DNA from: Selaginella moellendorffii
Lineage: Eukaryota > Plantae > Lycopodiophyta
NCBI RefSeq assembly: GCF_000143415.4
Contig: NW_003314369.1
Coordinates: 372,001-436,000, forward strand
DNA: 64,000 nucleotides
Reading direction: 5' to 3'
Below, in pieces: positions 407 through 19,900 of the stretch. Positions within the stretch are counted from its first letter, which is position 1. Every line of letters starts with the position of its first letter. The notes below the pieces were generated by a model. The model was not told the DNA's origin. It saw only the letters and a program-made list of their open reading frames with translations, and made no database searches. The position numbers and the translations under genes were made by a program.

Positions 407-1433
407 AATTTCCCTTCAACAAACTTTGTGATCTTTGTTATGACTGTCAACGTCAAACTCTCTAAGCTTTTTAACACCTTGTGGTTGCAAGCTCGGTATG
501 AGGTGGTGGGTGTTAGTCAATGTTATGGAGCAGCATTGCCATCAACCATGGCTGGAGATGTGCTCAAACAAAGCAGCTATGGTAGCAGACCTTGGTGGGA
601 GAGTACATTTCTGTGGATATGGACTCAATCTCAAACAATGAGGAGATCTTGGCTTGAGAAGCTAGAGGAATGTCTTCCAGATCAGACTCTTTGACGGATG
701 ATCTCATTACTTTGACATGGATTTAATCTGCCAAGTGTTCATGAAACGTTTTTTAAAAACTTTGGCCATGCAAAGCTGATATATTTAAACTTGGTGGTTG
801 TCCCTGATTCGAGCACATGGAAATCTCTACTAACCATGAAAGATTTGCTTGGCCTAGCATTAGCTCAAGTACACTTGCTCTTTTATCCTCTTTGTAGCCA
901 CTTCTGGCCTGTTCCCAGTGGTCTTATGCTTCCAGATGGGAGCAAACAAACCCCCAAAACATGTATTATTATTGTTTGAGTGCAAGTAAAATCACAGCTA
1001 TGGAACAAACGAAAGTGGTGGTAGGCTTAACATTTCTTCTGTTTAGGTTTGAGCTGAAGTATGTAATAGGATGGTGTGAGTGTCAGAAGTTTCACATGCT
1101 AAAATTTGAACGTTCACTGCCACAAAATCTCATTATCATAAACTTCCCTTTTGTTGGACTCTTCTTATATATATATACACCTTTATCACCTACAATCAAG
1201 CAGTGTTGTATTTCCACCCTAAAAAGGGCCGGGCCACTGCTACTGGGAGTGACGCGCATTTCCTTGTCCTCCTGCCACTGGGGAACCCTAGCCCCGACCC
1301 AGAAAGAAGAGAGCTTCAGAGACGCCCTAGCCACTGGAGACGATGCGGACTCCAAAGCTTTTGTTGGATCACGTTGAATGCGCCTTCCGGATCCCAGGCA
1401 CTTATCCACCGAGGGTTAGGGTTGCTCAACACC

Positions 1434-3665
1434 ATGGGGAGACGAACGAGGCAGATCTTCGAGGCTGCACAGGGTTTCACCTTGCCAGTTGCGGAAGACT
1501 TCCGGAGCCAACGCGGTGTTTGTAGGTGGGTGAATCGATTTGTATTCGGCGAAGATGCCGCCGCCGCGGCCTTGCGGGTGGGAGCTTGGCCCGAGCGACA
1601 TCGACTGGCAGAATGTAGAGATAAGGAGGAGTTCATGGCTGTTGTGGAATCCATTGAGGAGAGCGACCAAAGTGACGATGACACGACTGACATGAGAGGC
1701 GCAGTAGCAGTTGAAAAGGTGGCTGGCCAGGACGCAGCGCGAGCAGCCTTCTTCGAGTATCCTCTTGAGGACGAGGACGTACTGGAAGAGCTTTGGTCCA
1801 AAATCAAAAGGGATTATTGGACCTGGGCGCTCGGCAACGCTTACGTGGCACCGTTGTTTGCTATTGTGCAGAGTAGCGGCTGGGGTAAGTCAAGGCTGGC
1901 TTTTGAGCTCCACCGGAAGGGCTTGTACATCATCTACATTTCGTGCATGAAGGCCAGCCACTCCGGATTTCCCGGCCGGACTCCACACTTAGCTGCATGG
2001 ATTACTCAAGGCAAGCAGGTAACAGTACTGCGGGTGGCCGCGCTTTTGCTCGCCAGCATTGAGGCCCTCGCGGGTTATGTCAAAGGAGGTGGCGATCCTC
2101 ATGGCTGGATCCTCGACCAGACGGATCCCACCCGTGGCTTTCCTGTAGCAAACGACATAGCAAGTCGACTCCAAGCCTGTACGAGGCGTCTTGAAGCATC
2201 TGCAGCTGCAAAGGCTGCTGCTTTGCCCAGGACGTTTGAAAGACGCACGAGTAGAGAGTCTCACACATACAATGCCGTTGGGGAAGCATTAAAGACTGCT
2301 CTCCGAGACTTTCCTTTGGATGGTATTGCTTCCGATGGTATTACGCAACGACCGGATCAACGCCTCAAGGTGCTGTTTTGTTTTGACGAGGCTAGCGAGC
2401 TGGCGGAGCTGGAACTGGAGGGTGGCATGGATACGGCATTTACACTGCTGAGGCGGGTCCTGGGTAAAGCAGAGTTTGGTCTGTGGGCTCTAGTGCTTGG
2501 TACCAATTCGCGACTATTGGACTTCGTGCCATCCAAGGCGATGGATCCCACCAGAAAGGTGCGGGCTCGAGACTATAAACTGTTCAAGCCGTTTTGGTTA
2601 ACGGCCACTGCTGCTGTGCCTGGGGATCTCTCTTCCGGATCCCCAGAAAGCGTCTTCTGCCTAGGAAGACCCCTGTGGCGAGCTTTTATGGACAAAGGGT
2701 ACACTTTCAAGGGCTTACGTTTACTTGCAGTGGACAAGCTCAACTGTTCTGGCGAAGTAACAGATGCAACGGTGATTGCTGTTCTCGGCTGTACCATCGG
2801 CCTGGATGTTGCGTCATGGTCCGAAGCAGCGGAGACGAGTGTGGCTTCTCACATGATGACAGCTTGCTGGATTTCTGACGACCGGCGACGGCTTCATGTC
2901 TCGAATGCCGCAGAACCTGTTCTTGCGGCGGCCGCAGCAGGGTTTTTGCTTCAAGAGGTGACACTAAACAAAGTCCTCGGCGAGCTCTCCAAGATGTGCA
3001 AGGAAGGAGTGGTAACAGGGGGCCCCGGGGAAATTGTCACCAGGTTACTGCTGCTACTGGCGATGCTAGCGTGTCGCAGGGACGCGGGCGATCCCACGTT
3101 CACGGGAGAGATAAAGCTGGGAGCATTCCTGTCAAAACTGCTGGGAAAAGTTCCTCACGGTCTAGCCGGCACAGTGGACCTTGATGCGGGGCTCAACTTC
3201 AACGGCTTCTCGCCAACTTGTAGGAACTTGGAGCGCGGCATAATCAACGAGTGCTTGCAGCACATTCGAGCGTTGACGTGCAAGCCTGGACAGGAAGCCG
3301 TGGACAACGTTGTCCCGAGCACTGGCGGTCCAATTGGGATTCAGGCGAAGCGCTGGGAAAGCAACAACTCCACAAAGATGAGGAGAGCGGTTGGAAAGCT
3401 CGAGGCTGGTGTTGGTGGAGTGAACTTTATGCTCGGTATCATTTTACAGCTCGGCTCCCCTGAGCATCGTATCGTTGTTGAAGGTGCTGCCAACCGGACC
3501 ATAGTCGTGTATGGGCTATCTTCCGAGTTGTTTCCGTTTCTCACCCAAGCCACTGCCGACAAACTGCTAGATGTGTTGAAAGTCGGGAGTGCTGAATACT
3601 TGCTCCACATGACCGATGGGGAGCAGCGCATTGTGAGACGCATGCTTCCGCTGACTTATCTGTAG
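1434..3665 (+). CDS. Intronless Crinkler/RHS-like P-loop NTPase with C-terminal PD-(D/E)xK-type nuclease (family A)
   Basis: Within ORF 1203..3665; first in-frame ATG at 1434 (ACCATGG). Walker A AIVQSSGWGKSR, Walker B LFCFDEA, GRPLW, AEPVLAAAA, GGPGEIVTRLLLL, nuclease-like GQEAVDNVVP...IGIQAK. Confidence 0.75.
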   Translation: MGRRTRQIFEAAQGFTLPVAEDFRSQRGVCRWVNRFVFGEDAAAAALRVGAWPERHRLAECRDKEEFMAVVESIEESDQSDDDTTDMRGAVAVEKVAGQDAARAAFFEYPLEDEDVLEELWSKIKRDYWTWALGNAYVAPLFAIVQSSGWGKSRLAFELHRKGLYIIYISCMKASHSGFPGRTPHLAAWITQGKQVTVLRVAALLLASIEALAGYVKGGGDPHGWILDQTDPTRGFPVANDIASRLQACTRRLEASAAAKAAALPRTFERRTSRESHTYNAVGEALKTALRDFPLDGIASDGITQRPDQRLKVLFCFDEASELAELELEGGMDTAFTLLRRVLGKAEFGLWALVLGTNSRLLDFVPSKAMDPTRKVRARDYKLFKPFWLTATAAVPGDLSSGSPESVFCLGRPLWRAFMDKGYTFKGLRLLAVDKLNCSGEVTDATVIAVLGCTIGLDVASWSEAAETSVASHMMTACWISDDRRRLHVSNAAEPVLAAAAAGFLLQEVTLNKVLGELSKMCKEGVVTGGPGEIVTRLLLLLAMLACRRDAGDPTFTGEIKLGAFLSKLLGKVPHGLAGTVDLDAGLNFNGFSPTCRNLERGIINECLQHIRALTCKPGQEAVDNVVPSTGGPIGIQAKRWESNNSTKMRRAVGKLEAGVGGVNFMLGIILQLGSPEHRIVVEGAANRTIVVYGLSSELFPFLTQATADKLLDVLKVGSAEYLLHMTDGEQRIVRRMLPLTYL

Positions 3666-3879: not shown

Positions 3880-4720
3880 CCGCGTGACGGCGAGCTTGCC
3901 CTCGAGTTCATGGAGGATGCCGAGCCGCGCGACAATGTGAGTCGAGTCCGCATTCTTGGTCTGGGACAGAGATTACCCGAAGTTCGGGGCACTGGTCTCC
4001 GCCGTCTTGTGCATGGAAGGTGGATTCCCTTGGCCAATTGGATCATTGGGGAGGAAACTGCAAATGGCTGCTCGCCTCAGAGATTATCTCAACCCCTAGC
4101 TAGATCTTTGCAACAGCACGGAATGCATTGAGACAATCTTTGAGTCTATTCGGCATGCTACAGGGATCTGTCTGGTAGGAAGCCTTAGGGACTGCTATCC
4201 GGCGCTTGCCTTTGGATGGTGTTGCTGGTGATCGCCTCAAGGTGTTGTTTTGCTTTGACAAGCTGGCGGAGTTTAAACCGCATGGTGGCCTTCAGGATTT
4301 ACGCTGCTGAGGCGAGTTCTTGGAAGAGCAACTTCTGGTGTGTGGGCTCTGGTGCTTGGTACCAATCCATCTTCGACTATTGCACCACCAAAGGAATCGC
4401 TGTCGCAAACAGGGACTTGCACTGTGCCTCCCCCAGTTTGTCGGCCTGATCCGGCCTTCTTTTTCTGCCTTGGAAGACCATTGTGGCGAGCTTTGGGAGC
4501 AGCGGCCTTGCATTTGAACTGTTATGGCGGTCTGAACAGATGCAAACGTGATCGTGGCCCTGGGCCTACCATCATGGTCCCGAGCAGCAGAGAATTAGAG
4601 TATGGAGCACATGATGACAACATCATTTGTAGTCGCAGTCAAAGTCCACGCTCATGCTGCGTCAGCTCCAGGGTAGACGCAGCCATGACCTATTGCACTC
4701 TTGATGAGCATCTCAACTTC
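3880..4720 (+). pseudogene. Decayed tandem copy of the family A NTPase-nuclease gene
   Basis: Collinear matches to 1890-3200 (e.g. cgcctcaaggtgttgttttgctttgac; tgtgggctctggtgcttggtaccaat; FCLGRPLWRA) with many deletions and frameshifts. Confidence 0.75.
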
Positions 4721-6289: not shown

Positions 6290-6571
6290 TCTATATTTCT
6301 GTTTCAGCAACCCAGCAGTGATAACACTTCAAGCTAGGTAAGCACTTGCTTTTGTCTGTCTAGCTTGCTAATGAGTTCTTTTTGGATCAGGTTGTGTTGT
6401 AGTGTCCAAGTTGCTGGATGTATATGGACAAAAACTGCAGCACACAAGGTGTTTTCACCGGACGCCGGTGCCAACCTGCAAGTTGCCTCTTCTGGACAAT
6501 GGTGGTTTATGTACGGACTTGGGAGAATATTTTACTTTGGTCGGAAGGGAGGAGACGATTCAGCATCTGAT
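6290..6571 (+). pseudogene. Fragment (exon 2, intron 2, start of exon 3) of the family B coiled-coil/NTPase/nuclease gene
   Basis: Encodes PAVITLQA / SKLLDVYGQKLQHTRCFHR..CKLPLLDNGGLCTDLGEYFTLVGREETIQHLM, near-identical to ~7915-8190, then homology ends abruptly. Confidence 0.8.
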
Positions 6572-6825
6572 GGATGTATATGGAGATTCTTATCTTTCTT
6601 ATATAAAGTTAATCTTTAATAGTTATTATTTTACTTCTATATATAGTTCATGACTCTATATACAAAAAATATTTGTAAATATTGACAGGCTGACAGCCTT
6701 CCGCAAACGGCCCAGCTTGGTCAACATGTGAGATTTATCTAAGCCCAGCTCATATTCCTTATTGACAAGTGAACAATCCAACATTTAGTGAATTATGCTT
6801 CACATTTGCCAAGATAATAGGCAAA

Positions 6826-9800
6826 ATCCATGAAGGAGTTGAATATATTTATTGTTAAGAGAAGAAGGTTGCAAAATGATATCATAACCCGTGTACAAGT
6901 CCCACACTGAATCAAAACCATGAAAGAAGAAGTGCACGGGAGCAAAACAATGGGTAAGGATGACTTTAAGGATAGTCAAATATAATGTCATAACCAAATA
7001 TACATGATCAAGAGAGATGCCTCTAGCCTACACTTCGATCAATGAAGTAGCATTATTGCCACCTAGGATCAAGAGCATATACCTCAACAAACCACTCTTA
7101 ACATCCAATCCCCCTCCAGTCTTAAGAGCCAGGTCAGAGCAGGAGACCCACTCAAGCTCCTGTCTCGCAGCTTGTCCCGCACTAGATGCTCCGTGACAAA
7201 GCTGGCAAATGTCCATTGCCACCACTCAATCCAGATACAAGATCTGTTGCTTAACCGGAGGTGGATCCTCATGGTGGAGCTTGATGTGGAACATGCGGGA
7301 CGAAGCCAACCTGCCTAGAACGGCCCAAAGAACCACAGGTGCAACTTCATCCGTGCCATAGTCCATTGTCCCAGAGTGTACCTTTGGGTCGCCAACCTCA
7401 ACGGAACGAAAGGAGCTATGCTCGGTCGCTGCTAATCGCTGATATATAGTTTACAGGGGCGTCACTACCTTTCCCTCAAGCACAGTACGCTCCAGGTCGA
7501 CCGCCACACTATCAAGAGCAACAGCATCCTTCAGGTGGGGAAGGGCATATTTTAGAAGTTTTATGGGCCCGCAGAGCCCATTTGGCGACTAGGGTTAACA
7601 ATGTCTGCATCCATTGCGAGGCAAATTGAAGCACTCGAGGACAAGATCGAAGCACTCAAGCAGCAAATCGAAGCACTCAAGAAGCTAATCGAAGAGGCAA
7701 AAGATCCATGGGAGAGGGAGGAGCTGCGGGACGAGAGGCAGCAGCTGCAGGACGAGAGGGAGCAGCTGCAGGATAGACAGCAGCAGCTGTGGGATGCCTT
7801 GTTAAACCAGAGTAAGTGGTCTATCTCGTTTCGTGGTTTTGTTGCCCTTCGTGGCTGGCCTCCTCTATGTTTGCCTGTTTCCTCGTTTTGTGGCTAAGTA
7901 TTTGCTTATTTGTTATATTTCTATTTCAGCGACCCCGGCGGCGATAACACTTCAAGCTGCGCCAGGTAAGCACTCGCTAAAGAGTTCGTTTTGGATCGGT
8001 TTGTGTTGTAGTGTCCAAGTTGCTGGATGTATACGGAGAACAACTGCAGCGCGCAAGGTGTTTTCACCGGATGCCTGAGACGAGGGTGCCAACCTGCAAG
8101 TTGCCTCTTCTGGACAACGGTGGTTTATGTACGGACTTGGGAGAATATTTTACTTTGGTCGGAAGGGAGGAGACGATTCAGCATCTGATGGCAGCCGCTG
8201 CAAGGGTGTTTGGAACTTTCATGAACACGACGGCCAATGCCTCGGATATTGAACAAAGAGAGTTCTTGTTGATGCTCATCGGATTTCCCGGCGCAGGTAA
8301 AACAACTGTCGGGACATGCCTCTCAGCTCTTCTCAGAGAAGCGTGGGAGAGGGACACAAAAACAGGGGATATAGATGGCCTTGTAGAGGATCAGCTAGGC
8401 GACAAAGGGCTTGTGAAGCAGTTCAAAGAAATGGTGAACAACGTGTTGGAGACCGGCAGAGATCTTACAATGTATCATTCGATTGAAACTACGAGGGCAG
8501 GGGATGTAACTCTCCTGGAGAACGGCCTGGCAGCAGAACAGGTTTTGGCCCTTCGGTGCTTTCATGCAGCTCTTTGTCCAGTGCATACTACTGGTTATGG
8601 CGGCTTTCTCAGGCAGTTGGATGACAAATTTCCAGGCCTGAGGAATGTGCTGACTTTCGGAGATGTGATCGACTTCATTCGAACTGGTCTTAAGGTTCCT
8701 GCAGATAAGCGAATTTTCCTATCTTGGTTTTTTGATGATGTCAACAAGGCCCGGCCTCAGCACGGCCGCCCACCCGCATCGTCCTGGATTCATGATGCTT
8801 TCTCGGCCTATGTTCAACATATCAAAGACAACCGAGGTGGCCTGACGTTTCCTATACTTACAGCAGCAACGACCGAATTTGCCGGGGCCACAATGCGCTA
8901 CACATCAACGGAGAAGGCTCTGAGTATTTTTATACCTATCAGGCCTTTGAAAGAGCAGGAGGTGGTCAGAGTTACGAAAATCTTCCTTACAAGACTAGGT
9001 AATACTCTGGACATGGAGAAACCATTTGAGCTGAAGGACGGACTAAGGAACCTGATAAAGTTATCAGGAGGGAATCCTCGCATGCTTGTTCACCTTTTGA
9101 GAGGGTTGATGCCTGACCTGGATGTTTCGAAGTTCTATGAAAAGGTTTCCTTGTCTTTTATCTTGATGTGATGAGAAAATTTTCTATGTTTGTTACAGGT
9201 GAATCAAGATCTCACTCAAATCGATCTCCATAACACAATAACGACCGCCTGGGGTAATATCAAACGTGGTTTTTATTATCGGTACCTCAAGGACGAGAAG
9301 TATTTGTTGGTGTTACGAGCTTTTTATGTTGCGCTGCTGGGGACCCTGATCAGTCGGGAAGAACTAGTCTGGCCAGGTAGCAGATACGAAGATAACTGGG
9401 GGTCCTTAGAGTCTTGCGGTTTAGTTGGACTCTTACACAACGAGGTACTATTTTGATATCTCAGAGTTTATGTCAGAACTTATGGTTGTCAATTACAGGA
9501 GCTGCCATCTAACAAGAAGATTAAATTATCAAGAGATGAAGATGCTGCGTTCTCCATCGTGTTCTCTCCACTCCTCATTTACCATCTCGTCGAGAACTTA
9601 CATGTGGCGGAGCTCCAGGATTTGTGTCCACCTAAACTAATTTCTAATCCCAAAAACAAGGAGGTATCTGATCTAATGTCCATTGTGTTGATGATCTATA
9701 TGTTGCGGCTTTTTCATGATCGTGAGGGGAAAGGAACAGTGTTTGAGTTTAAACTCGAAGAGATTCTTCCCTCCAATTTCCACATTCCTGCAAGTATGCA

Positions 9801-10850
9801 AGCTTTGAAGTTCCGGCTGCCAACTGGTGCAAAGTTTGGACGTCCGACACATCAGCCTCATCAGATACATACAGCAGACGTATTTCAGGCCTTCCTAAGA
9901 GACAACAGTCAGCAGTGTTATTGGGTTGGTGCTGGCAACCACGGACCTGATAGCTTCATCCATCTGCAGCTGATGGATGCTGAGAACAAGCTGCAAGATT
10001 TCTTTTTATTTATTGAGAGCAAACACAGGTATAAAAAACCTTTATAAAGCTCAATGTAATGTACTGTATAACAGGGATGTTTATGAAGGGCAGCAAGCCA
10101 ACTGGGAAGAAAACTTTGAGAAAAAAATATGGACAATAAAGCATTGGATGAATGAAGGTATTTATTTTCTAGTTGTGGGAGGTTAATTGTGTTTATTTTC
10201 AGGTGAGAATTACGCCATGGTCTTTATGACCGATCAAGCATTGGGTAACTTGATTTCCAAAGTCACAAAATCTGAAAGGATGGTGGTGCTTGTGCCAAAG
10301 GTTCATGAATGTTTGTATGGGTATCCAGCACAGAGTCCATTTGGTAAGTTATTTTAATGCTTTTATTATTAGTCTTTTATGTTTTATTTGTAGGTTTATT
10401 AGGTGCTGTGTGTTTTGATCTCGTCTACAAACCTAGTAATGAGCAAAATGACAGTTTTGATGAAGAGCCCAGCACGAAGAGGAGTCGTTGGTGTTTTTAA
10501 AATGCTGTTACCACATTTACTCATTTACCAATAATATTAAATTTGTAACACTATGTGACGATTTAGTTCACAAATCTTTGAAATTGTGAAATGTTAGATG
10601 TGAATTAACATATGTGTGTGTGTATAAACTATAATGCTTGAGTATGCATAAACACCCCATGCGTGCAAAGATTTGTGCTATATTGATGCTATGAAGGAAA
10701 ATTTGTGTAGTTCTTGTTGCGATGTCCAAGGAACAGATTAATCGGCCTTTTGTGTGATGACACACAATTTTAAGTAATCGCTAATAAGCTCCCATACCAA
10801 GCATTGCCCAGTTGGGCAACAATGTTTAGCACTGGTCTATAGTCCTTTTT
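6826..10850. repeat. Left arm of ~4-kb inverted repeat (pairs with 13565..17563)
   Basis: atccatgaaggagttgaatata at 6826 is the reverse complement of the sequence ending at 17563; gttgggcaacaatgtttagcact at ~10811 pairs with ~13582-13604; paired ORFs are near-identical. Confidence 0.9.
7601..10500 (+). CDS. Coiled-coil + STAND/Crinkler-like P-loop NTPase + PD-(D/E)xK nuclease + NLS (family B, copy 1), 8 exons, 828 aa
   Basis: Exons 7601-7811, 7930-7965, 8012-9144, 9199-9444, 9499-10028, 10075-10157, 10203-10343, 10394-10500; all GT-AG and in frame (2487 nt). Motifs LIGFPGAGKTT, WFFDD, SGGNPRML, NHGPDSF...FLFIESKH, C-terminal PSTKRSR. Confidence 0.8.
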
Positions 10851-10937
10851 TGGTTTGCTTAAGCATAGGGGGATTGGGATGGTAGTGAATATACCTAAAA
10901 TATGCTTGGATATTCTAGGATATTCTACCATCTAACA

Positions 10938-11312
10938 GTTGGTATTCATTTAGATTAATTTGGTATTTATAATTTATAAACATGTTTATAATTTATAAAC
11001 TTTCCTAAACCCTTTCTAGTATATTATTTTTATTCTATTATCTAATGGTTGATATGCAATAAGATTAATCTTGTGTTTATAAATTACTAACATGCTTATG
11101 ATTATAAACTTTATTTGATCAATTCGGTTGGTATTCATTTAGATTAATCTGGTATTTATAATTTATAAACATGTTTATAATTTATAAACTTTCCTAAACC
11201 CTTTCTAGTATATTATTTTTATTCTATTATCTAATGGTTGATATGCAATAAGATTAATCTTGTGTTTATAAATTACTAACATGCTTATGATTATAAACTT
11301 TATTTGATCAAT
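10938..11312. repeat. AT-rich tandem direct duplication, 189-bp period, with internal palindromes
   Basis: gttggtattcatttagattaat... starts at 10938 and 11127; each unit contains the perfect palindrome ttataaacatgtttataa. Confidence 0.85.
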
Positions 11313-11453
11313 TAGATTAATAAGTAATAATAAAACTACCATTAAGCAAACCAAGCGTTGCTACATGCAATGCGTAGCAATTTATTTAATCTATATGTTT
11401 AAATACCTCGTACGGACGAGGTACGGTAATAGGGATTAGCATAGATCTTGAGA

Positions 11454-13546
11454 ATGTGGCAGCGCCATCGCAAAGCGGCGAAGCAGCACAAGAGTGACGC
11501 CGTGGATCCGGAATGGAAGCTCCTGCTGTTCTTGCTCTTGGCCGCCGGATTGTGTGGATATCGCATCGGAGGCGTGAGCGAGGAAGCGGCATGGACGATC
11601 GACCTCTTCTCGGTGAGGGATTTAGGGGATTTTTTCTTCTTCTCGGTCGGCTGAGGCTACATTCTGCGCCAGGAATATGATCCTCCTCGCTTTCAGTACC
11701 GCGATCTCGTGGAATCCTTCCGGAAAGAAGAGGTATGGCTGCCTCTCGGGTGTTCCTTCGTTTCCCCAGATGAAAATATTCTTACAGGGTAGATTGGAGC
11801 GTCCGGGGTTGTGGGATAGGCCCTCAGACAATGGCTGGAAGCGGTGCCCCGAGGATTTTGATCGTTTCTCACGTAAGTTCTTTGTGACGAGAAATTCGAC
11901 TCTTTACAGCTTTATCAGGTGTGTAGTGACGACATGGGATCGATCTCGCTACTTTCAAGTTCTTTGCGGAGGAGGCTTGTTTCAGCTACATATTTGTGTA
12001 AGAAATGGTTTTGCCTTTTTCTTTGACGAATCTCTAGTGGCTGGTTTCAGGTCTGCAATGCTGTTGCTGTAGCAAGGCTTCTCAATGCTACGCTTGTCAT
12101 TCCATACTTCAAGCACCATCCGTTCTGGAACGATCCAAGGTCTTTGGTTCTACACTTGTTCTTCGATTTGCTTCTTGGTGAATTTACTTGTTTCTGTGTA
12201 TGTTTCAGCCAGTTTGAAGATATTTACGACTTGAACCATTTCATGTCAACCTTGAAAGGCGATGTGAAAGTCGTCACAGAGTTGCCTGCAATGTATAGTT
12301 GGAGCACGCCGAGTTTCTACTGGGGACGTTGCTTGGATAGGCCGAATTGTATGACGTTTCTTCCAAAGCACACTACCCCCAAATGGTTCTTCCAGCACAT
12401 TCTCCCGATTATGGAAAGGTAAACGGGATCACTGTTTTTTCGTTTGCATGTTTGTTAACGGTTATTCCAAAACAGATATGAAGTCGCAGCTGTCGATGGT
12501 TTTGAGCACAAACTTACCTTTGAAGGTCTCCCTGCGAGTATCAGCAAGCTGCGATGCAAGGTGAACTTCTACGCCCTGCGCTTTGTGAAGCCGATCCGGG
12601 ATCTTGGAGATGCATTGACGCTGCGGATGAGAACCAAAACATTATCAGGCGATCCACTGCGTAACCAGGAAAATTCGACAAAAAAGTACATCGGTCTTCA
12701 CGTGAGATTCGAAAGAGACATGCTTGCATATTCTAGTTGTGACTTTGGTGGAGGTCAGGCCGAGCAGAAAGCTCTTGCGTCATTTCGATACCAAGTTTGG
12801 AGGTATGCATCAGCTTAACATTCCTAACTGCGAAATACTACTTTCTGCTTTTCTGTGTTCCAGTAACCGAGTCATCAAAGCGCTGAAGAGGCCTTCTGAT
12901 CTTCGGCGAAATGGAAGCTGTCCTCTAACTCCAGAAGAGGTCGGCCTCCTCCTTGCCGCATTCGGCTTTACCGCCACTACGCCCCTCTATATTGCTGGAA
13001 AGGTACACGAACTCCTTGTTCTTTCGTTTTTCGCCGCTAGACTCGTCTCTAAAACAGGCAGTTTATGGGGGACCTCGGAGAATGGAGCCGCTGAAAAGTC
13101 TGTTCCCTCTTGTCGAAAACAAGCACTCGCTCGCCACGAGACAGGAGCTGGCGCCTTTCCGGAACTTCGCTCACAAGCTGACGGCCTTGGACTTCAGGGT
13201 GCTCTTCAACAGCGACGTCTATATGTCCAATGCCGCTGGAAATCTTCCAAACGTCCTGGTGAGCAAGTCAGATCGATCTGGGATTAGTGATTCCTTTCTT
13301 CCTCCCTTGCAGACGGGACATAGAAGCTACTTTGGGCCTTACGCATCGGTTCATCCCGACAAAGCTCGCTTAGCAACGCTTCTTTCGGACGAGAGACACG
13401 CGACGAACTGGACGAGCTTTGCGGAGCGGGCTTTCGCGGCGCACGAGTCGCGAATGGGAGCGATCGAGCCGAGGAAATCGAGGTACTCCGTTTTCAGGTG
13501 TCCAGCGCCGGATTGTATGTGTTTGCGATCCAATTCGCGAGATTAG
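11454..13546 (+). CDS. O-fucosyltransferase family (GT106/O-FucT) type II membrane glycosyltransferase, multi-exon
   Basis: N-terminal TM (KLLLFLLLAAGLCG), GGLFQLHIC/VCNAVAVARLLNATLVIP, FEDIYDLNHF, RCKVNFYALRF, YIGLHVRFERDMLAYSSCDFGGG, RRNGSCPLTPEEVG, ALDFRV, GHRSYFG. Confidence 0.9.
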
Positions 13547-13564
13547 ATCTTTCTAAAGTTCCCA

Positions 13565-16500
13565 AACTGCAAAATGACTATAGTGCTAAACATTGTTGCC
13601 CAACCTTTGTATGGGAGCCTATTACATCTGTAGCGATTACTTAAAATTGTGTGTCCTCACACAAAAGACCGATTAATCTGTTCCTTGGACATCCCAACAA
13701 GAACTACACAAATTTTCCTTCATAGCGTCAATATAGCACAAATCTTTGCACGCATGGGATGTTTATGCATACTCAAGCATACATCAGTTCTCTAGCCATG
13801 ACCACATTAATTTCAAAAGATTTGTGAGCTTTAGCGGGATAAATCGTCACAACAAACGTTTAATATTATTGGTAAATGAGTAAATGTGGTAACAGCATTT
13901 TAAAAACACCACCGACTCCTCTTCGTGCTGGGCTCTTCATCAAAACTGTCATCTTGCTCATTACTAGGTTTGTAGACGAGATCAAAACACACAGCACCTA
14001 ATAAACCTACAAATAAAACATAAAAAACTAATAATAAAAGAATTAAAATAACTTACCAAATGGACTCTGTGCTGGATACCCATACAAACATTCATGAACC
14101 TTTGGCACAAGCACCACCATCCTTTCAGATTTTTTGACTTTGGAAATCAAGTTACCCAATGCTTGATCGGTCATAAAGACTATGGCATAATTCTCACCTG
14201 AAAATACACACAATTAACCTCCCACAACTAGAAAATGAATACCTTCATTCATCCAATGCTTTATTGTCCATATTCTTTTCTCAAAGTTTTCTTCCCAGTT
14301 GGCTTGCTGCCCTTCATAAACATCCCTGTTATACAGTACATTACATTGAGCTTTATAAAGGTTTTTTATACCTGTGTTTGCTCTCAATAAATAAAAAGAA
14401 ATCTTGCAGCTTGTTTTCAGCATCCACCAGCTGCAGATGGATGAAGCTATCAGGTTCGTGGTTGCTAACACCAACCCAATAAAACTGCTGACTGTTGTCT
14501 CTTAGGAAGGCCTGAAATACATCTGCTGTATGTATCTGATGAGGCTGATGTGTCGGACGTCCAAACTTTGCACCAGCTGGCACCCGGAACTTCAAAGCTT
14601 GCATACTTGCAGGAATGCAGAAATTGGAGGGAAGAATTTCTTCGAGTCTAAACTTGAATACTGTTCCCTTCCCCTCACGATCATGAAAAAGCCGCAACAT
14701 ATAGATCATCAACACAATGGACATCAGATCAGATACCTCCTTGTTTTTGGGATTAGAGATTAGTTTAGATGGACACAAATCCTGGAGCTCCACCACATGT
14801 AGGTTCTCGACGAGATGGTAAATGAGGAGTGGAGAGAACATGATGGAGAAAGTAGCATCTTCATCTCTTGATAATTTAATCTTCTTGTTAGATGATAGCT
14901 CCTGTAATTGACAACCGCAGAAGTTCTGACATAAACTCTGAAATATCAAAATAGTACCTCGTTGCGTAAGAGTCCAACTAAACCGCAAGACTCTAAAGAC
15001 CCCCAGTTATCTTCGTATCTGCTACCTGGCCAGACTAGTTCTTCCCGACTGATCAGGGTCCCCAGCAGTGCAACATAAAAAGCTCGTAACACCAACAAAT
15101 ACTTCTCGTCCTTAAGGTACCGATAATAAAACCCACGTTTGATATTACCCCAGGCGGTCGTTATTGTGTTACGGAGATCGATTTGAGTGAGATCTTGATT
15201 CACCTGTAACAAACATAGAAATTTTCTCATCACATCAAGATAAAAGACAAGGAAACCTTTTCATAGAACTTCGAAGCATCCAGGTCAGGCATCAACCCTC
15301 TCAAAAGGTGATCAAGCATGCGAGGATTCCCTCCTGATAACTTTATCAGGTTCCTTAGTCCGTCCTTGAGCTCAAATGGTTTCTCCATGTCCAGAGTATT
15401 TCCTAGTCTTGTAAGGAAGATTTTCGTAACTCTGACCACCTCCTGCTCTTTCAAAGGCCTGATAGGTATAAAAATACTTAGAGCCTTCTCCGTTGATGTG
15501 TAGCGCATTGTGGCCCCGGCAAATTGGGTCGTTGCTGCTGTAAGTATAGGAAACGTCAGGCCACCTCGGTTATCTTTGATATGTTGAACGTAGGCCGAGA
15601 AAGCATCATGAATCCAGGACGATGCTGGTGGGCGACCGTGCTGAGGCCGGGCCTTGTTGACGTCATCAAAAAACCAAGATAGGAAAATTCGCTTATCTGC
15701 AGGAACCTTAAGACCAGTTCGAATGAAGTCGATCACATCTCCGAAAGTCAGCACATTCCTCAGGCCTGGAAATTTGTCATCCAACTGCCTGAGAAAGCCG
15801 CCATAACCAGTAGTATTCACTGGACAAAGAGCTGCATGAAAGCACCGAAGGGCCAAAACCTGTTCTGCTGCCAGGCCGTTCTCCAGGGGAGTTACATGCC
15901 CTGCCCTCGTAGTTTCAACCGCATGATACATTGTAAGATCTCTGCCGGTCTCCAACACGTTGTTCACCATTTCTTTGAACTGCTTCACAAGGCCTTTGTC
16001 GCCTAGCTGATCCTCTACAAGGCCATCTATATCCCCTGTTTTTGTGTCCCTCTCCCACGCTTCTCTGAGAAGAGCTGAGAGGCATGTCCCGACAGTTGTT
16101 TTACCTGCGCCGGGAAATCCGATGAGCATCAACAAGAACTCTCTTTGTTCAATATCCGAGGCATTGGCCGTCGTGTTCATGAAAGTTCCAAACACCCTTG
16201 CAGCGGCTGCCATCAGATGCTGAATCGTCTCCTCCCTTCCGACCAAAGTAAAATAATCTCCCAAGTCCGTACATAAACCACCGTTGTCCAGAAGAGGAAA
16301 CTTGCAGGTTGGCACCCTCGTCTCAGGCATCCGGTGAAAACACCTTGCGCGCTGCAGTTGTTCTCCGTATACATCCAGCAACTTGGACACTACAACACAA
16401 ACCGATCCAAAACGAACTCTTTAGCAAGCCAGACAGACAAGAGCGAGTGCTTACCTGGCGCAGCTTGAAGTGTTATCGCCGCCGTGGTGGCTGAAACAGA

Positions 16501-17563
16501 AATGTAACAAATAGGCAAATACATAGCCACAAAACGAGGAAACAGGCGCGCAGCCAAACATAGAGGAGGCCAGCCCACAACAAACAAAACCACGAAACGA
16601 GATAGACAACTTACGGTTCAACAAGGCATCCCACAGCTGCTGCTTTCTATCCCGCAGCTGCTCCCTCTCGTCCTGCAGCTGCTGCCTCTCGTCCCACAGC
16701 TCCTCCCTCTCCTCTGGATCTTTTGCCTCTTCGATTAGCTTCTTGACTGCTTCCATTTGCTGCTCGAGTGCTTCGATTTTCTCCACGAGTGCTTCAATTT
16801 GCCTCGCAATGGATGCAGACATTGTTAACCCTAGTCGCCAAATGGGCTCTGAAAAACTTATATAATTGACAAAGCACTCTGATACGCTTGTAGTCCTAAA
16901 ATATGCCTTTCCCCAAGTCTCGACTTAAGCTGCCTGAAGGAACGAAAGGATGCTGTTGCTCTTGATACTGTGGTGGTCGACTTGGAGCTTAGCGTGCTTG
17001 AGGGAAAGATGGTGACGCACCTGTAAACTATATATCAGTGATTAGCAGCGACCGAGCATAGCTCCTTCCGTTCCGTTGAGGTTGGCGAACCCGTTTCCAG
17101 CCCCAAAGGTACACTCTACCTGTGGCTCTTTGGGCCGTTCTAGGGAGGTTACAGGCTTCCAGCTTCGTCCCGCATGTTCCACATCAAGCTCCATAAGGAG
17201 CCACCTCCGGTTAAGCAACAGCTCGTCACGGAGCATCTAGTGCGGAACAAGCTGCGAGACAGCAGCTTGAGTGGGTCTCCCGCTCTGACCTGGCTCTTAA
17301 GACTGGAGGGGGATTGGATGTTAAGAGTGGTTTGTTGAGGTATACGCTCTCTATGACATGATCCTAAGTGGCAGTAGTACCACTTCATTGATTGTATATT
17401 TGGTTATGACATTGTATTCGACTATCTTTGGAGTCATTGTTTTGCTTCCGTGCACTTCTTCTTTCATGGTTTTGATTCAGTGTGGGACTTGTACACATGG
17501 GTTATGACATCATTTTGCAACCTTCTTCTCTTGACAATAGATATATTCAACTCCTTCATGGAT
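13565..17563. repeat. Right arm of ~4-kb inverted repeat (pairs with 6826..10850)
   Basis: Reverse complement of the left arm, with more indels outside the coding exons. Confidence 0.9.
13900..16822 (-). CDS. Coiled-coil + NTPase + PD-(D/E)xK nuclease + NLS (family B, copy 2)
   Basis: Same exon structure as copy 1 (ORFs 16451-16822, 15230-16390, 14946-15233, 14353-14988, 14214-14474); stop TAA at 13900-13902; Walker A/B, GNPR and PD..ExK motifs intact. Confidence 0.8.
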
Positions 17564-17679: not shown

Positions 17680-19900
17680 ATAGAAACTTTACCTCATCGG
17701 CCAGATGAATCGAACAGACCCTTGGCCTCCGTAATCCAAGAGCATTCCTGGACATTATCGAGTTTAGAGAAGAAGGGCATTCCATGTCACGAGATCTCTC
17801 GATGGTGCAGATTTGATACAGCCACTCATGCCATCCGTATTGAATATGATTCTTAAATGCTGTGACCAATATGCCAATGTGTTCGACGTCATCTTTCGTG
17901 TTTGCTGTTGGTTTCAGCCACCTCTAAAGGAGTTGCTAGCACGGCATTACATGTAGTAAGATTTCGCTGGATGCCGGAGAGGAGCTTGATCTCTTGGACA
18001 TTGAAGCTGGCGGCGGCCAGGCAAATTTCTTACACGATGCCCGAGTCTCGCGCAGCAATGGTTCACGCAGCACGGAGATCCGCAGGAAGCATCTCGCCCA
18101 GCACGGCGGCGACCTCAATCAAGCAGCTCTTCCATTCCCCGTTCACTACCTTGCGTGTATGCTCCTCGCACTTGAGCGGAATGATTTTTAAAGCCGAGCA
18201 AGTAAACCAACTGGATCAGCCGGGTCAACCCCCATACTCACTGAAGAAAGAACCCCAAATGTCATTTCTGTGCACACTGTATTACAAATGGATTGCATAT
18301 TTTTACACAGGAGACACATTAAAGAGAGGATGAAATCTCAATTTCATCCTCTGCACAAGGTTCTTGTATGTAATGAAATGCATAGTACTCACCAGACGTC
18401 GTGGAAGAGGATCTTGCTTCCTGCCATTCACTGGAGAAATCCATAGTGAGCAACCAGATGTAAAAAGAAAAAACCTAGACATACCGTATGGTAACAAGAA
18501 GCGTAGAGGATCGCCGATGACGCGATCCTCCGGGTCATCTGCGAAAGAACAGGTCAGATTAGTTACCTTGCTTGTAAGCCTTACCAATGTCTTGCCATTC
18601 CGTGTTCAAGAGCTCCTCCAACATAGAGTCATCGAGCCGAGGACGCTTAACGCTACCGTTCGTGAGCGTGTTTTTGAAGCGTGATTACTATAAGGATTTT
18701 GCTTCGGTCCTTGAATGGTCCAACTATAGATTTACACGCCTCATTCAGGCCCTGCAAACGAAGCATTTGGATGGAGCACTGTTCAAAACAAAGTATGCAC
18801 CTCAACATCTATGCGGCTCTGCAGGATCGGTAGCATGTAGTCCGTCTCCCGAATGTAGGTCCATATTTGCTTGGAGCCAATCACTAGATACTGATCTGCG
18901 GTTTGTAGACGTTCCTTGACACACAAAAGTGTGAGAAAGAGACTCGCACTGTGCACATAAGACATCACCTGATGAAAATAGAACAAGATGGCTCATCACT
19001 TCCATAGTTAGGAAGCTCTTCCTTATCCATTACTGGTGATAGCCTGTGGTAAAATAAAAGGGCTCCAACTTCCTGGCAAGGATTATATGCGCGTCCGAAT
19101 CCCCAGCAGTGTACACCCATCTTTCATGAACGATAACCACCACACTGTTGAACTTCGTCGCCAGAAACACTGCAGGCCCGTGGAAGTCTAGCTCCTCAGC
19201 CAGGCCTTTTACTTGCTCGTCCATCCTGAAACAGCGATTAGCAACTAAGGTATAAGTAAAATGAAGCTCACTTCTGGAAGGCAGCTTCCAGAGCAGGCTT
19301 GATGTCCTCTGCTAAAGGCTTTGTACCCAGAGCCTCTAGTATATATCTGACGAGGAACTTGACTCGCAAGTTGAATAACTTGTGCACTGAATCTCTATCA
19401 GAAACACTCAGAACCATTTGTGTCATATTTGGAGTGAACTTTCTGTGTTGCTTGTTTTCTTGCCTCCTCACGAGAAAATCCATCAATCTTATTAGTGAGG
19501 TTCAAGATATCATTTTCCACCCAGTTCTGAAAAACAAAACAAATCAAAACAAATATCATAAAGTGGTTTAACACTTACTGGAAACATCTTCGCAATACGT
19601 CAAATCGCTGTGTATGTTCATCCAGAACCTCCATTTACGCCAGAAACCTAATTGAAAATGTTCAAATAAACCTATTCTTCATTAATCTTATTTTAGTTAA
19701 AAGGAAAGAGCAGGTACTAGGAACTTGACTCGTAAGTTGAGTAACTTGTGCACTGAATCTAGAAACACTCAGAACCATCGACCAGTACCCTCTCCATCCA
19801 TTCCCACATATACATCATGAAGTGCAGCGATCGTGACGTCGCCAGCCACATCCTTGTGCACGTTGAATCTCTGTGTGTCGAACCGCACAATTAGCGCCAG
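17680..19900 (-). pseudogene. Degenerate multi-exon gene of unknown family
   Basis: Coding-like segments flanked by GT/AG sites (19268-19486, 19030-19224, 18802-19005) with in-frame stops; ~60-bp internal duplication at ~19354 and ~19720. Confidence 0.35.

What the first reader, a model, noticed from the sequence alone, without database searches (positions are those of the whole stretch)
6826..17563. 10.7-kb palindrome: two intact coiled-coil/NTPase/nuclease genes convergently bracketing an O-fucosyltransferase gene
Seen: ~4-kb inverted arms, each carrying a complete 8-exon gene plus ~750 bp upstream, around a ~2.7-kb spacer with a full glycosyltransferase gene. Established: NTPase + restriction-endonuclease-fold proteins of the Crinkler/RHS class are linked to mobile elements and inter-organism conflict. 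Inference: this is either a composite-transposon-like unit carrying a passenger gene, or an inverted duplication of an immune nuclease maintained by selection or arm-to-arm gene conversion. I see no target-site duplication at the outer ends.
Basis: partly seen in the sequence, partly recalled or inferred. Interest (0 to 1): 0.85.

Follow-up and report, generated by a model that had tools for sequence, protein, structure and literature searches.

The report
Inverted gene pair in spikemoss
A real 10.7-kb inverted duplication in the spikemoss Selaginella moellendorffii holds two intact, transcribed copies of an uncharacterised ATPase-plus-nuclease gene around an ordinary sugar-transferase gene; it is an old local duplication partly kept alike by gene conversion, not a transposon.

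Summary
The window is Selaginella moellendorffii GL377673.1:372001-436000.

- **Structure.** The arms are 6826-10843 and 13580-17563. They flank a 2,736-bp spacer.
- **Arm genes.** Each arm carries an intact 8-exon gene of 828 or 827 aa.
- **Spacer gene.** The spacer holds an expressed O-fucosyltransferase gene.
- **Not an assembly artefact.** The arms differ by 3-8% and by indels. The second copy of the locus in the assembly (GL377649.1) has the same structure, with both genes open.
- **Age and gene conversion.** At the arm ends, all 25 informative sites group left with left and right with right across the two scaffolds. The duplication is therefore older than that split. In the gene body (7930-10541) this signal is lost: 7 sites fit it, 8 group the arms within a scaffold, and 4 are crossed, where about 61 fitting sites were expected. 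That pattern needs gene conversion.
- **Paralogues.** Copies on other scaffolds share only this gene body, at about 94.7% identity.
- **Not a mobile unit.** I found no target-site duplication, no transposase and no second copy of the whole unit.
- **Protein.** It has a coiled coil, an ORC/Cdc6- or TnsC-like AAA+ ATPase, a winged helix and a probable PD-(D/E)xK nuclease. This resembles Crinkler C-terminal modules in layout only. Sequence relatives are confined to green plants and algae.

The scan noted a similar inverted pair on other DNA of this genome (s1-334462). I did not test that note.

The parts
6826..10843 (+). Left arm of the inverted duplication
   Evidence: Self-BLAST and MAFFT alignment of the arms; inner end read from the sequence.
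13580..17563 (-). Right arm of the inverted duplication
   Evidence: The outer end begins at the same ATCCATGAAGG... motif as the left arm.
7601..10500 (+). Left-arm gene. It has 8 exons (7601-7811, 7930-7965, 8012-9144, 9199-9444, 9499-10028, 10075-10157, 10203-10343, 10394-10500) and encodes 828 aa: coiled coil, AAA+ ATPase, winged helix, putative PD-(D/E)xK nuclease and a basic C-terminal tail.
   Evidence: Gene model. GT..AG joints at introns 1, 2, 3, 5 and 6 in RNA-like contigs, and one contig identical to this copy across exons 1-3. Folds.
13900..16822 (-). Right-arm gene with the same 8-exon structure (16822-16615, 16490-16455, 16389-15257, 15203-14958, 14901-14372, 14325-14243, 14197-14057, 14006-13900), 827 aa
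   Evidence: Mapped through the arm alignment. The frame is intact and all splice sites are GT-AG. There are 41 amino-acid differences from the left copy.
7930..10541 (+). Homogenised core of the left arm, from exon 2 to 41 bp past the stop. This is the only part shared with paralogous loci.
   Evidence: Arm-to-arm identity is 96-98% here against 91-94% at both arm ends. Site patterns are mixed. Paralogues L001, L002 and L005 match 7983-10541 at about 94.7%, but exon 1 at only 76%.
13858..16490 (-). Homogenised core of the right arm
   Evidence: Counterpart of 7930-10541 in the arm alignment.
10844..13579 (.). Spacer between the arms
11442..13583 (+). O-fucosyltransferase family gene. The CDS runs from the ATG at 11454 to the stop at 13546, with at least 10 introns, and encodes a type II membrane protein.
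   Evidence: Pfam PF10250 on three exons. Annotated as a 524-aa product with PF10250 on both scaffolds. Spliced contigs in three runs start at 11442-11446 and end at 13570-13583, which is at the inner end of the right arm.
10850..11354 (.). MITE-like, AT-rich insertion in the spacer, upstream of the O-FucT gene. It has 13-nt perfect terminal inverted repeats and an internal 189-bp tandem duplication, and it is absent from the other scaffold.
   Evidence: Terminal repeats and tandem copies. Absent in L003. A DNA contig skips it, and its word depth is 7,000-14,000 against 18 for the neighbouring single-copy DNA. Related copies lie near the paralogues.
6292..6623 (+). Decayed fragment of a third copy (exon 2 to early exon 3), in direct orientation just outside the left arm
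   Evidence: 88-90% DNA identity to 7914-8191. tblastn matches aa 71-159 at 55% identity.

Best explanation
This is an old local inverted segmental duplication of one member of a fast-evolving gene family confined to green plants and algae. It is not a mobile unit.

History of the locus. A roughly 4-kb piece holding the whole gene and its promoter was copied in inverted orientation on the far side of a resident O-fucosyltransferase gene. This happened well before the two copies of the locus in the assembly diverged. Those two copies are allelic haplotypes or very recent homeologues. Afterwards, gene conversion overwrote the gene body from exon 2 to just past the stop, both between the arms and with paralogues on other scaffolds. 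The promoter/exon-1 end and the 3' end of each arm went on diverging. All four copies stay open and at least two are transcribed, under moderate purifying selection.

A consequence of the arrangement (inferred). A crossover between inverted arms can only flip the spacer. It cannot delete either gene. The arrangement therefore allows exchange between the arms without loss of a copy.

The protein (inferred, not shown). It is most likely an ATP-switched DNA nuclease. The coiled coil would serve for self-association. The ORC/Cdc6- or TnsC-like AAA+ module and the winged helix would serve for nucleotide-dependent DNA engagement. The PD-(D/E)xK domain would be the catalytic end, and the basic tail would direct nuclear import. 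Its patchy distribution, copy-number turnover and rapid change fit a role in genetic conflict or immunity.
For: Real structure, assembled twice. The window is identical to GL377673.1. GL377649.1 (L003) carries the same left gene, O-FucT gene and right gene in the same order and orientation. The arms differ by 3-8% and by indels, so they cannot be one copy assembled twice.

Age. All 25 informative sites in 6826-7929 and 10542-10843 group left with left and right with right across the two scaffolds.

Conversion. The core has 7 such sites, 8 'concerted' and 4 crossed, against about 61 expected of the first kind (Fisher p = 2.4e-6). Polarised with a paralogue, most variable core sites are private to one copy, which gives a star-like tree. 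Introns are as alike as exons, so constraint on coding sequence does not explain the similarity.

Exchange between loci. Paralogues match 7983-10541 at 94.7%, but exon 1 at only 76%.

Selection. Four open frames carry only in-frame indels. dN/dS is 0.34-0.46.

Expression. There are spliced contigs at 5 of the 7 introns. One contig is identical to the left copy. Another carries the private variants of the other scaffold's right copy.

Protein. The AAA+ model has pLDDT 88 and its best matches are ORC/Cdc6, TnsC, MuB and RuvBL. The Walker A motif, a conserved Walker-B-like aspartate and a GGNPR sensor-2-like motif are conserved. The winged helix matches with Z 4-6. The family conserves an E...D...(E/Q)SK motif. 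The weak fold matches are dominated by PD-(D/E)xK families.
Against: - Arm-to-arm conversion cannot be cleanly separated from conversion of both arms by an unsampled third copy. Since the scaffold split, 'concerted' sites (8) do not outnumber 'orthologous' ones (7), so ongoing exchange between the arms is not shown.
- I had no long reads or optical maps. The support for the structure is two Sanger-era scaffolds.
- Whether the second scaffold is an allele or a recent homeologue is not settled. One paper proposes a duplication 13-15 million years ago (PMC7801247).
- The nuclease fold rests on a mediocre model (pLDDT 64, and below 50 after residue 259) and on TM-scores of 0.26-0.37.
- No activity, localisation or phenotype is known.
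Confidence: 0.75

Rival explanations
1. Composite-transposon-like or otherwise mobile unit: the two arms act as terminal elements that move the O-FucT gene as a passenger.
For: The arms are inverted and bracket a gene. The AAA+ domain's structural neighbours include the transposition ATPases TnsC and MuB. The family exists in several copies.
Against: - There is no TSD at the outer ends.
- There is no transposase or integrase domain.
- The arm ends (6826-7900 and 10542-10843) have no other copy in the window or in the paralogous loci.
- Paralogues share only the spliced gene body.
- The genes have 7 spliceosomal introns and are normal expressed host genes.
- The unit sits at the same site on both scaffolds, with arms 7-9% diverged at their ends.
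Confidence: 0.03
2. Assembly artefact: one copy wrongly assembled as an inverted pair.
For: The genome is an older Sanger whole-genome assembly that mixes two haplotypes (PMC7801247). Short-read contigs are fragmented over the arms.
Against: - The arms differ at 104 mismatches and 27 gap openings over 3.2 kb, with 41 amino-acid differences.
- The same structure is assembled independently on a second scaffold, with its own private differences.
- Transcripts match copy-specific variants.
Confidence: 0.02
3. No gene conversion: the gene body is more alike than the arm ends only because it is under stronger constraint.
For: dN/dS below 1 shows constraint. The introns are short (45-54 bp) and may be partly constrained. 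Synonymous divergence (about 0.05) is not far below arm-end divergence (0.07-0.09).
Against: Constraint lowers the number of changes but does not change which copies group together. The core has 12 of 19 informative sites in conflict with the tree seen at both arm ends, where chance parallel change should give fewer than one. The paralogues jump from 76% identity in exon 1 to 94.7% from intron 2 onward.
Confidence: 0.08
4. The inverted, convergent arrangement is itself selected. It might produce double-stranded RNA that restrains a dangerous nuclease, or act as a device to shuffle variation between two immune-type genes.
For: Another inverted pair of ATPase-nuclease genes was noted elsewhere in this genome (s1-334462; not tested by me). 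The closest paralogue also occurs as two inverted copies on GL377653.1.
Against: - A related clade is duplicated in tandem, not inverted.
- No RNA contig crosses from the left gene into the spacer (zero depth at 10601-11400 in the three RNA-like runs), so read-through hairpin RNA is not seen.
- One of the GL377653.1 copies lies at a scaffold end and may be a mis-join.
Confidence: 0.1

Closest known systems
Palindromic segmental duplications with arm-to-arm gene conversion (for example the sex-chromosome palindromes of primates, PMC6790999)
   Same: Inverted arms lie around a unique spacer and carry genes. Arm similarity is higher than the age of the duplication predicts. There is phylogenetic evidence of exchange between copies.
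   Different: This one is much smaller: 4-kb arms against tens of kb to Mb. It is autosomal and in a plant. Only the gene body is homogenised, and paralogues on other scaffolds take part. Arm identity is 95-98%, not above 99.9%.
C-terminal 'NTPase + HTH + REase' modules of Crinkler (CRN/CR) effectors, as summarised in PMC5289972 from Zhang et al. 2016
   Same: The order of domains is the same: P-loop NTPase, a helix-turn-helix type domain, and a restriction-endonuclease-fold domain. The review states that such proteins also occur in land plants and free-living eukaryotes and are tied to conflict.
   Different: There is no Crinkler header (ubiquitin-like domain with its motifs) and no secretion signal. 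A coiled coil stands in that place. No Crinkler or RHS protein is among the 17 sequence relatives in 1.84 billion representatives. The only link is a weak feature-based lead to Pfam RHSP.
ORC/Cdc6-type and transposition AAA+ ATPases (TnsC of Tn7, MuB)
   Same: These are the best structural matches for the ATPase domain (Foldseek E 5e-5 to 1e-3). A winged helix follows the ATPase, as in Cdc6/ORC. There is a GGNPR motif where Cdc6/ORC have their sensor-2 arginine; that placement is from my own knowledge.
   Different: TM-scores are only 0.3-0.4 and sequence identity 11-16%. The Pfam ORC-CDC6-like match is far below threshold. The protein is fused to a nuclease-like domain and a coiled coil, which none of these ATPases have.
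Plant NLR immune receptors (CC-NB-ARC-LRR)
   Same: There is an N-terminal coiled coil and a central switch-type NTPase followed by a winged helix. The best structural match of that winged helix is the one in an Arabidopsis NLR (Z 6.2). The family is multicopy and fast-evolving.
   Different: There is no NB-ARC Pfam match and there are no LRRs. The ATPase is closer to ORC/Cdc6 and TnsC than to STAND proteins in the fold search. The C-terminus is a nuclease-like domain, not a sensor repeat.

Membership tests
Palindromic segmental duplication with gene conversion | Two arms in inverted orientation around a unique spacer | tested here: met
   Arms at 6826-10843 and 13580-17563 with a 2,736-bp spacer. 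The same structure is present on a second scaffold.
Palindromic segmental duplication with gene conversion | Exchange between copies shown by trees that disagree along the arm | tested here: met
   At the arm ends, 25 of 25 informative sites are 'orthologous'. In the core, 7 are orthologous, 8 concerted and 4 crossed (Fisher p = 2.4e-6). The donor may be the other arm or a third copy; that is not resolved.
Composite transposon / mobile unit | Target-site duplication at the outer ends | tested here: not met
   The flanks outside 6826 and 17563 share no direct repeat.
Composite transposon / mobile unit | Terminal elements encode a transposase and occur elsewhere with the same ends | tested here: not met
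   No transposase domain. The arm ends are unique among the fetched DNA, and only the gene body recurs. The whole genome could not be searched.
Crinkler/CR effectors | N-terminal CR header (ubiquitin-like fold with LxLFLAK/HVLVxxP-type motifs) and a secretion signal | tested here: not met
   Residues 1-70 are a heptad coiled coil and give only coiled-coil Pfam noise. No Crinkler header family was reported. The N-terminus is hydrophilic by inspection.
Crinkler/CR effectors | C-terminal NTPase + HTH + REase module homologous to CR toxin modules | tested here: inconclusive
   The same domain order is supported by the folds. No CR protein is among the sequence relatives. There is only a weak RHSP lead. 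The original classification paper was not available.
PD-(D/E)xK (restriction endonuclease fold) nucleases | alpha-beta-beta-beta-alpha-beta core with acidic residues and lysine: E ... (P)D ... (D/E/Q)xK | tested here: inconclusive
   The family conserves KE.SD, G.DS and F.L..(E/Q)SK. The model puts these on a helix and two adjacent strands. The weak matches are enriched in PDDEXK_4, PDDEXK_7, Mrr_cat, MUS81, NucS and Can2. TM-scores are 0.37 or less, and the second half of the domain is poorly modelled.
AAA+ ATPases, ORC/Cdc6-TnsC-like | Walker A, Walker B and sensor-2 arginine in a helical lid, with the AAA+ fold | tested here: met
   P-G-x-G-K is invariant, as is an aspartate in the Walker-B-like FFDD stretch (my assignment), and GGNPR is conserved. 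The model has pLDDT 88 and 28 Foldseek matches at E <= 1e-3, all AAA+. Assignment to a clade within AAA+ is tentative.
Plant NLR (NB-ARC STAND) | NB-ARC domain and C-terminal LRRs | tested here: not met
   No PF00931 or LRR match in any family member.
GDP-fucose protein O-fucosyltransferase family (Pfam PF10250), for the spacer gene | Match to PF10250 above threshold | tested here: met
   Single exons score 54.2 and 38.9 bits against a cut-off of 31.5. The annotated 524-aa product carries PF10250.

The most novel reading that the evidence does not exclude
Inverted pairing may be a recurrent, selected way of organising these plant ATPase-nuclease genes. At least three loci in this genome may show it. 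It would let two copies of a potentially self-harmful, immune-type nuclease exchange variation by gene conversion without risk of deletion. It might also restrain them through double-stranded RNA. On this reading the family would be a previously unrecognised, NLR-like plant defence nuclease with a coiled-coil head.
Probability: 0.1. Interest if true: 0.7.

Novelty: new member of a known kind. Interest (0 to 1): 0.4.

Why it matters
The locus is a compact, well-resolved plant example of a gene-bearing palindrome. The footprint of gene conversion can be read directly here, because two diverged versions of the whole structure are available.

It also marks an uncharacterised, expressed gene family with no Pfam model and a distribution restricted to green plants and algae. 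The family's layout is coiled coil, ORC/TnsC-like AAA+ ATPase, winged helix and a probable nuclease. That layout recalls both Crinkler toxin modules and immune switch proteins. If the protein proves to be an ATP-gated nuclease used in defence or genome conflict, lycophytes would have an immune-type protein class absent from seed plants.

As a structural feature of the genome, however, the palindrome itself is ordinary.

Tried and rejected
- **Pfam.** Scans of the exons and of nine relatives gave no family for the arm gene.
- **Solved structures by sequence.** Profile searches gave only generic P-loop hits for the ATPase and nothing for the C-terminal part.
- **Wider homologue search.** A word-indexed search with a full-length family alignment returned only Selaginella paralogues.
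- **Neighbouring ORF.** BLASTP and hhalign of the family against the neighbouring intronless ORF (1434-3662) found no relationship beyond a Walker-B-like stretch.
- **Primary paper.** The Crinkler classification paper (Zhang et al. 2016) is not held. I used a review that summarises it.
- **Literature on this locus.** A search for Selaginella palindromes found nothing specific.
- **Reads.** The listed runs are all kept as short-read contigs, and the four I laid cannot span an arm. I had no long reads.
- **AT-rich spacer repeat.** I considered that it was part of the duplicated gene unit, because related copies lie near the paralogues. I rejected this. It is a very high-copy MITE-like element that is absent from the other scaffold.
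- **Empty-site test.** I could not look for the O-FucT orthologue in other Selaginella species. The spliced protein has no reference that I could hand to the search tools, and the genome collections on hand hold no plants.


Full report
**Source and observation**

The window is identical to GL377673.1:372001-436000 of the Selaginella moellendorffii assembly GCA_000143415.2. A scan for inverted repeats and a self-BLAST confirm the palindrome. A global alignment of the arms and inspection of the inner ends place the left arm at 6826-10843 and the right arm at 13580-17563. The spacer between them is 2,736 bp.

Identity is uneven along the arms. It is about 93% with many indels over the outer 750 bp. 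It is 94% over exon 1 and intron 1. It is 96-98% from exon 2 to 41 bp past the stop codon. It falls to about 91% over the inner 300 bp. The sequences just outside the outer ends share no direct repeat.

**The arm genes**

Each arm holds a complete 8-exon gene with GT-AG at every intron. The left gene is 828 aa and the right gene 827 aa, with 41 amino-acid differences between them. Exons (97.1% identical) and introns (95.9%) are about equally alike.

NCBI annotates these genes as uncharacterised LOCs, with models of varying completeness: P0026 here, and P0027 and P0024 on the other scaffold.

Contigs from three runs that look like RNA carry GT..AG joints exactly at my introns 1, 2, 3, 5 and 6. 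One 677-nt contig is identical to the left copy from exon 1 into exon 3, with intron 2 retained. Another contig carries the private variants of the right copy on the other scaffold. At least two of the four copies are therefore transcribed. The kind of these runs is a guess by the tool. The splice joints are what argue for RNA.

**The spacer**

The spacer gene matches Pfam O-FucT PF10250. It is spliced at 10 or more introns in all three RNA-like runs. Its transcripts end at 13570-13583, at the inner edge of the right arm.

Upstream of it, the window haplotype carries a 505-bp AT-rich element at 10850-11354. This element has 13-nt perfect terminal inverted repeats and an internal 189-bp tandem duplication. 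It is missing from the other scaffold. A DNA contig skips it, and its word depth is several hundred times that of the neighbouring DNA. I read it as a MITE-like insertion polymorphism, unrelated to the palindrome.

**Not an artefact, and older than the scaffold split**

The published assembly holds two haplotypes of about 106 Mb each (PMC7801247). That paper also proposes a duplication 13-15 million years ago, so I leave open whether the second scaffold is an allele or a recent homeologue.

GL377649.1 (L003) is collinear with the window. Identity is 96-98% to the right of the palindrome and 86-89% to the left. It carries the same left gene, O-FucT gene and right gene in the same order and orientation.

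I aligned the four arms and classed the informative sites.
- In 6826-7929 and 10542-10843, all 25 informative sites group window-left with scaffold-2-left and window-right with scaffold-2-right.
- The inverted duplication therefore predates the split of the two scaffolds. Its arms are about 7-9% diverged at their ends, against about 2% between scaffolds at the inner ends.
- Two independently assembled, mutually diverged versions rule out a mis-assembly of one copy.

**Gene conversion in the gene body**

In 7930-10541, the same density of 'orthologous' sites would give about 61 of them. I observed 7, alongside 8 that group the two arms of one scaffold and 4 crossed (Fisher p = 2.4e-6).

Polarising with a paralogue shows that most variable sites are private to a single copy: 28, 16, 38 and 22 for the four copies. 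This gives a star-like tree. Chance parallel change should yield fewer than one conflicting site. Constraint cannot reorder a tree. The gene body must therefore have been overwritten after the duplication, at about or before the time the two scaffolds split.

The same block is what paralogous loci share. L001, L002 and L005 match 7983-10541 at about 94.7%, but exon 1 at only 76%, and nothing of the arm ends. Exchange is thus family-wide and not only between the arms. I cannot tell whether the last event was arm-to-arm or came from an unsampled copy.

A cluster of 12 private changes lies in the left copy at 9549-9823. It may be a small tract from such a copy.

**Selection**

All four copies keep open frames. 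Their only length differences are in-frame: 3 and 12 nt on the other scaffold's left copy, 12 nt on its right copy, and 3 nt in the window's right copy. Pairwise dN/dS is 0.34-0.46.

In contrast, the paralogues L001, L002 and L005 carry a 4-nt deletion in exon 7. This was also seen in one RNA contig. They are annotated as ending after exon 5.

**Not a mobile unit**

- There is no target-site duplication.
- There is no transposase or integrase domain.
- There is no second copy of the arm ends in the fetched DNA.
- The genes are intron-rich, expressed host genes.
- A related clade of the family is duplicated in tandem, 24 kb apart on GL377585.1. The family therefore spreads by ordinary segmental duplication in either orientation.
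- Just outside the left arm, 6292-6623 is a decayed fragment of a third copy in direct orientation. This points to repeated local duplication and decay.

**The protein**

An exhaustive profile-free search of 1.84 billion representative proteins found only 17 relatives. All the named ones are from green plants and algae: many Selaginella paralogues, the fern Adiantum, Klebsormidium, Chlorokybus, Coccomyxa and Myrmecia. No Pfam family covers the protein.

| Part of the protein | Evidence |
|---|---|
| Residues 1-70 | Heptad coiled coil |
| Exon 3 | Confident model (pLDDT 88) of an AAA+ ATPase. Nearest solved structures are ORC/Cdc6, TnsC, MuB, RuvBL and Trip13. TM-scores are only 0.3-0.4. |
| ATPase motifs | Walker A and a Walker-B-like aspartate are invariant, and a GGNPR motif is conserved |
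| Next ~110 residues | Winged helix. Best matches are the winged helices of plant NLRs (Z 6.2), Cdc6/ORC and MarR/ArsR repressors. |
| Remainder | Family-wide motif KE.SD ... G.DS ... F.L..(E/Q)SK on a helix and two strands. Weak structural matches are dominated by PD-(D/E)xK nuclease families. The model is mediocre. |
| C-terminus | Ends in a short basic patch |

I call the nuclease fold probable, not shown.

This order of NTPase, HTH and REase is the commonest layout of Crinkler C-termini according to a review of Zhang et al. 2016. That review also says such proteins occur in land plants (PMC5289972). The Crinkler header is absent here, and no Crinkler or RHS protein is a detectable sequence relative. 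The resemblance is one of design, and membership is not established. An NLR reading fails on NB-ARC and LRRs.

**Earlier scan notes**

- A first-stage note on 7601-10500 (s1-363785) reads the gene as NLR-like without LRRs. My folds partly agree on layout, but not on a STAND assignment.
- A follow-up on another piece of this genome (s1-334462) reports a 14.5-kb inverted pair of ATPase-nuclease genes kept alike by gene conversion. I did not test it, and it is not independent support.
- The neighbouring intronless ORF (s1-363843) is unrelated to the arm gene at the sensitivity I had.

**Verdict**

The palindrome is an ordinary kind of structure. The uncharacterised gene family it carries is the more interesting part.

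Noticed in passing
window 1203-3665 (+), with a decayed partial copy at 4179-4667: An intronless 743-820-aa ORF lies 3 kb upstream of the left arm. It has a GWGKS P-loop-like motif and a C-terminal IQAK motif. It is annotated as a 743-aa protein with no Pfam match. It shows no detectable similarity to the arm gene (BLASTP, hhalign). Another scan note reads it as a Crinkler-type NTPase-nuclease.
   Followed up: partly
window 10850-11354: A MITE-like AT-rich element with 13-nt perfect terminal inverted repeats and an internal 189-bp tandem duplication sits in the O-FucT promoter region. It is absent from the other scaffold and very high-copy in a DNA run. Related copies lie just downstream of the paralogous genes in L001, L002 and L005.
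   Followed up: partly
window 18748-19282 versus L003 7163-7684: A segment of about 535 bp, 1.2 kb outside the right arm, is inverted between the two scaffolds at 95.7% identity. This is a small inversion polymorphism next to the palindrome.
   Followed up: no
L002 (GL377653.1:713472-736073) and L005 (GL377653.1:791844-814213, reversed): The closest paralogue and at least 20 kb around it occur twice on one scaffold in inverted, convergent orientation. The genes are about 76 kb apart, with 97.5-99.7% identity. One copy reaches the scaffold end, so a mis-join cannot be excluded. L001 on GL377604.1 is a third copy of the same segment.
   Followed up: partly
L001 about 12700, L002 and L005 equivalents (counterpart of window exon 7, 10203-10343): The three paralogous copies carry a 4-nt deletion in exon 7 that shifts the frame of the last part of the nuclease-like domain. 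An RNA contig with the same 4-nt gap was laid at window 10233, so these truncated copies appear to be transcribed.
   Followed up: partly
L006 and L007 (GL377585.1:2241290-2244740 and 2265314-2268764): Two genes of a 72%-identical clade encode the identical 921-aa protein. They lie in tandem, 24,024 bp apart. This is either a very recent direct duplication or one homogenised by conversion.
   Followed up: no
window 9549-9823 (left-arm exon 5): Twelve of the 28 changes private to the window's left copy cluster in 275 bp, where about 3 would be expected. This may be a short conversion tract from an unsampled paralogue, or local diversifying selection.
   Followed up: no
P0006 (Klebsormidium nitens, 1913 aa), residues 666-729: A distant family member has a ubiquitin-like domain (Pfam E 1.2e-4, below threshold) upstream of the ATPase. 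This recalls the ubiquitin-like header of Crinkler proteins.
   Followed up: no
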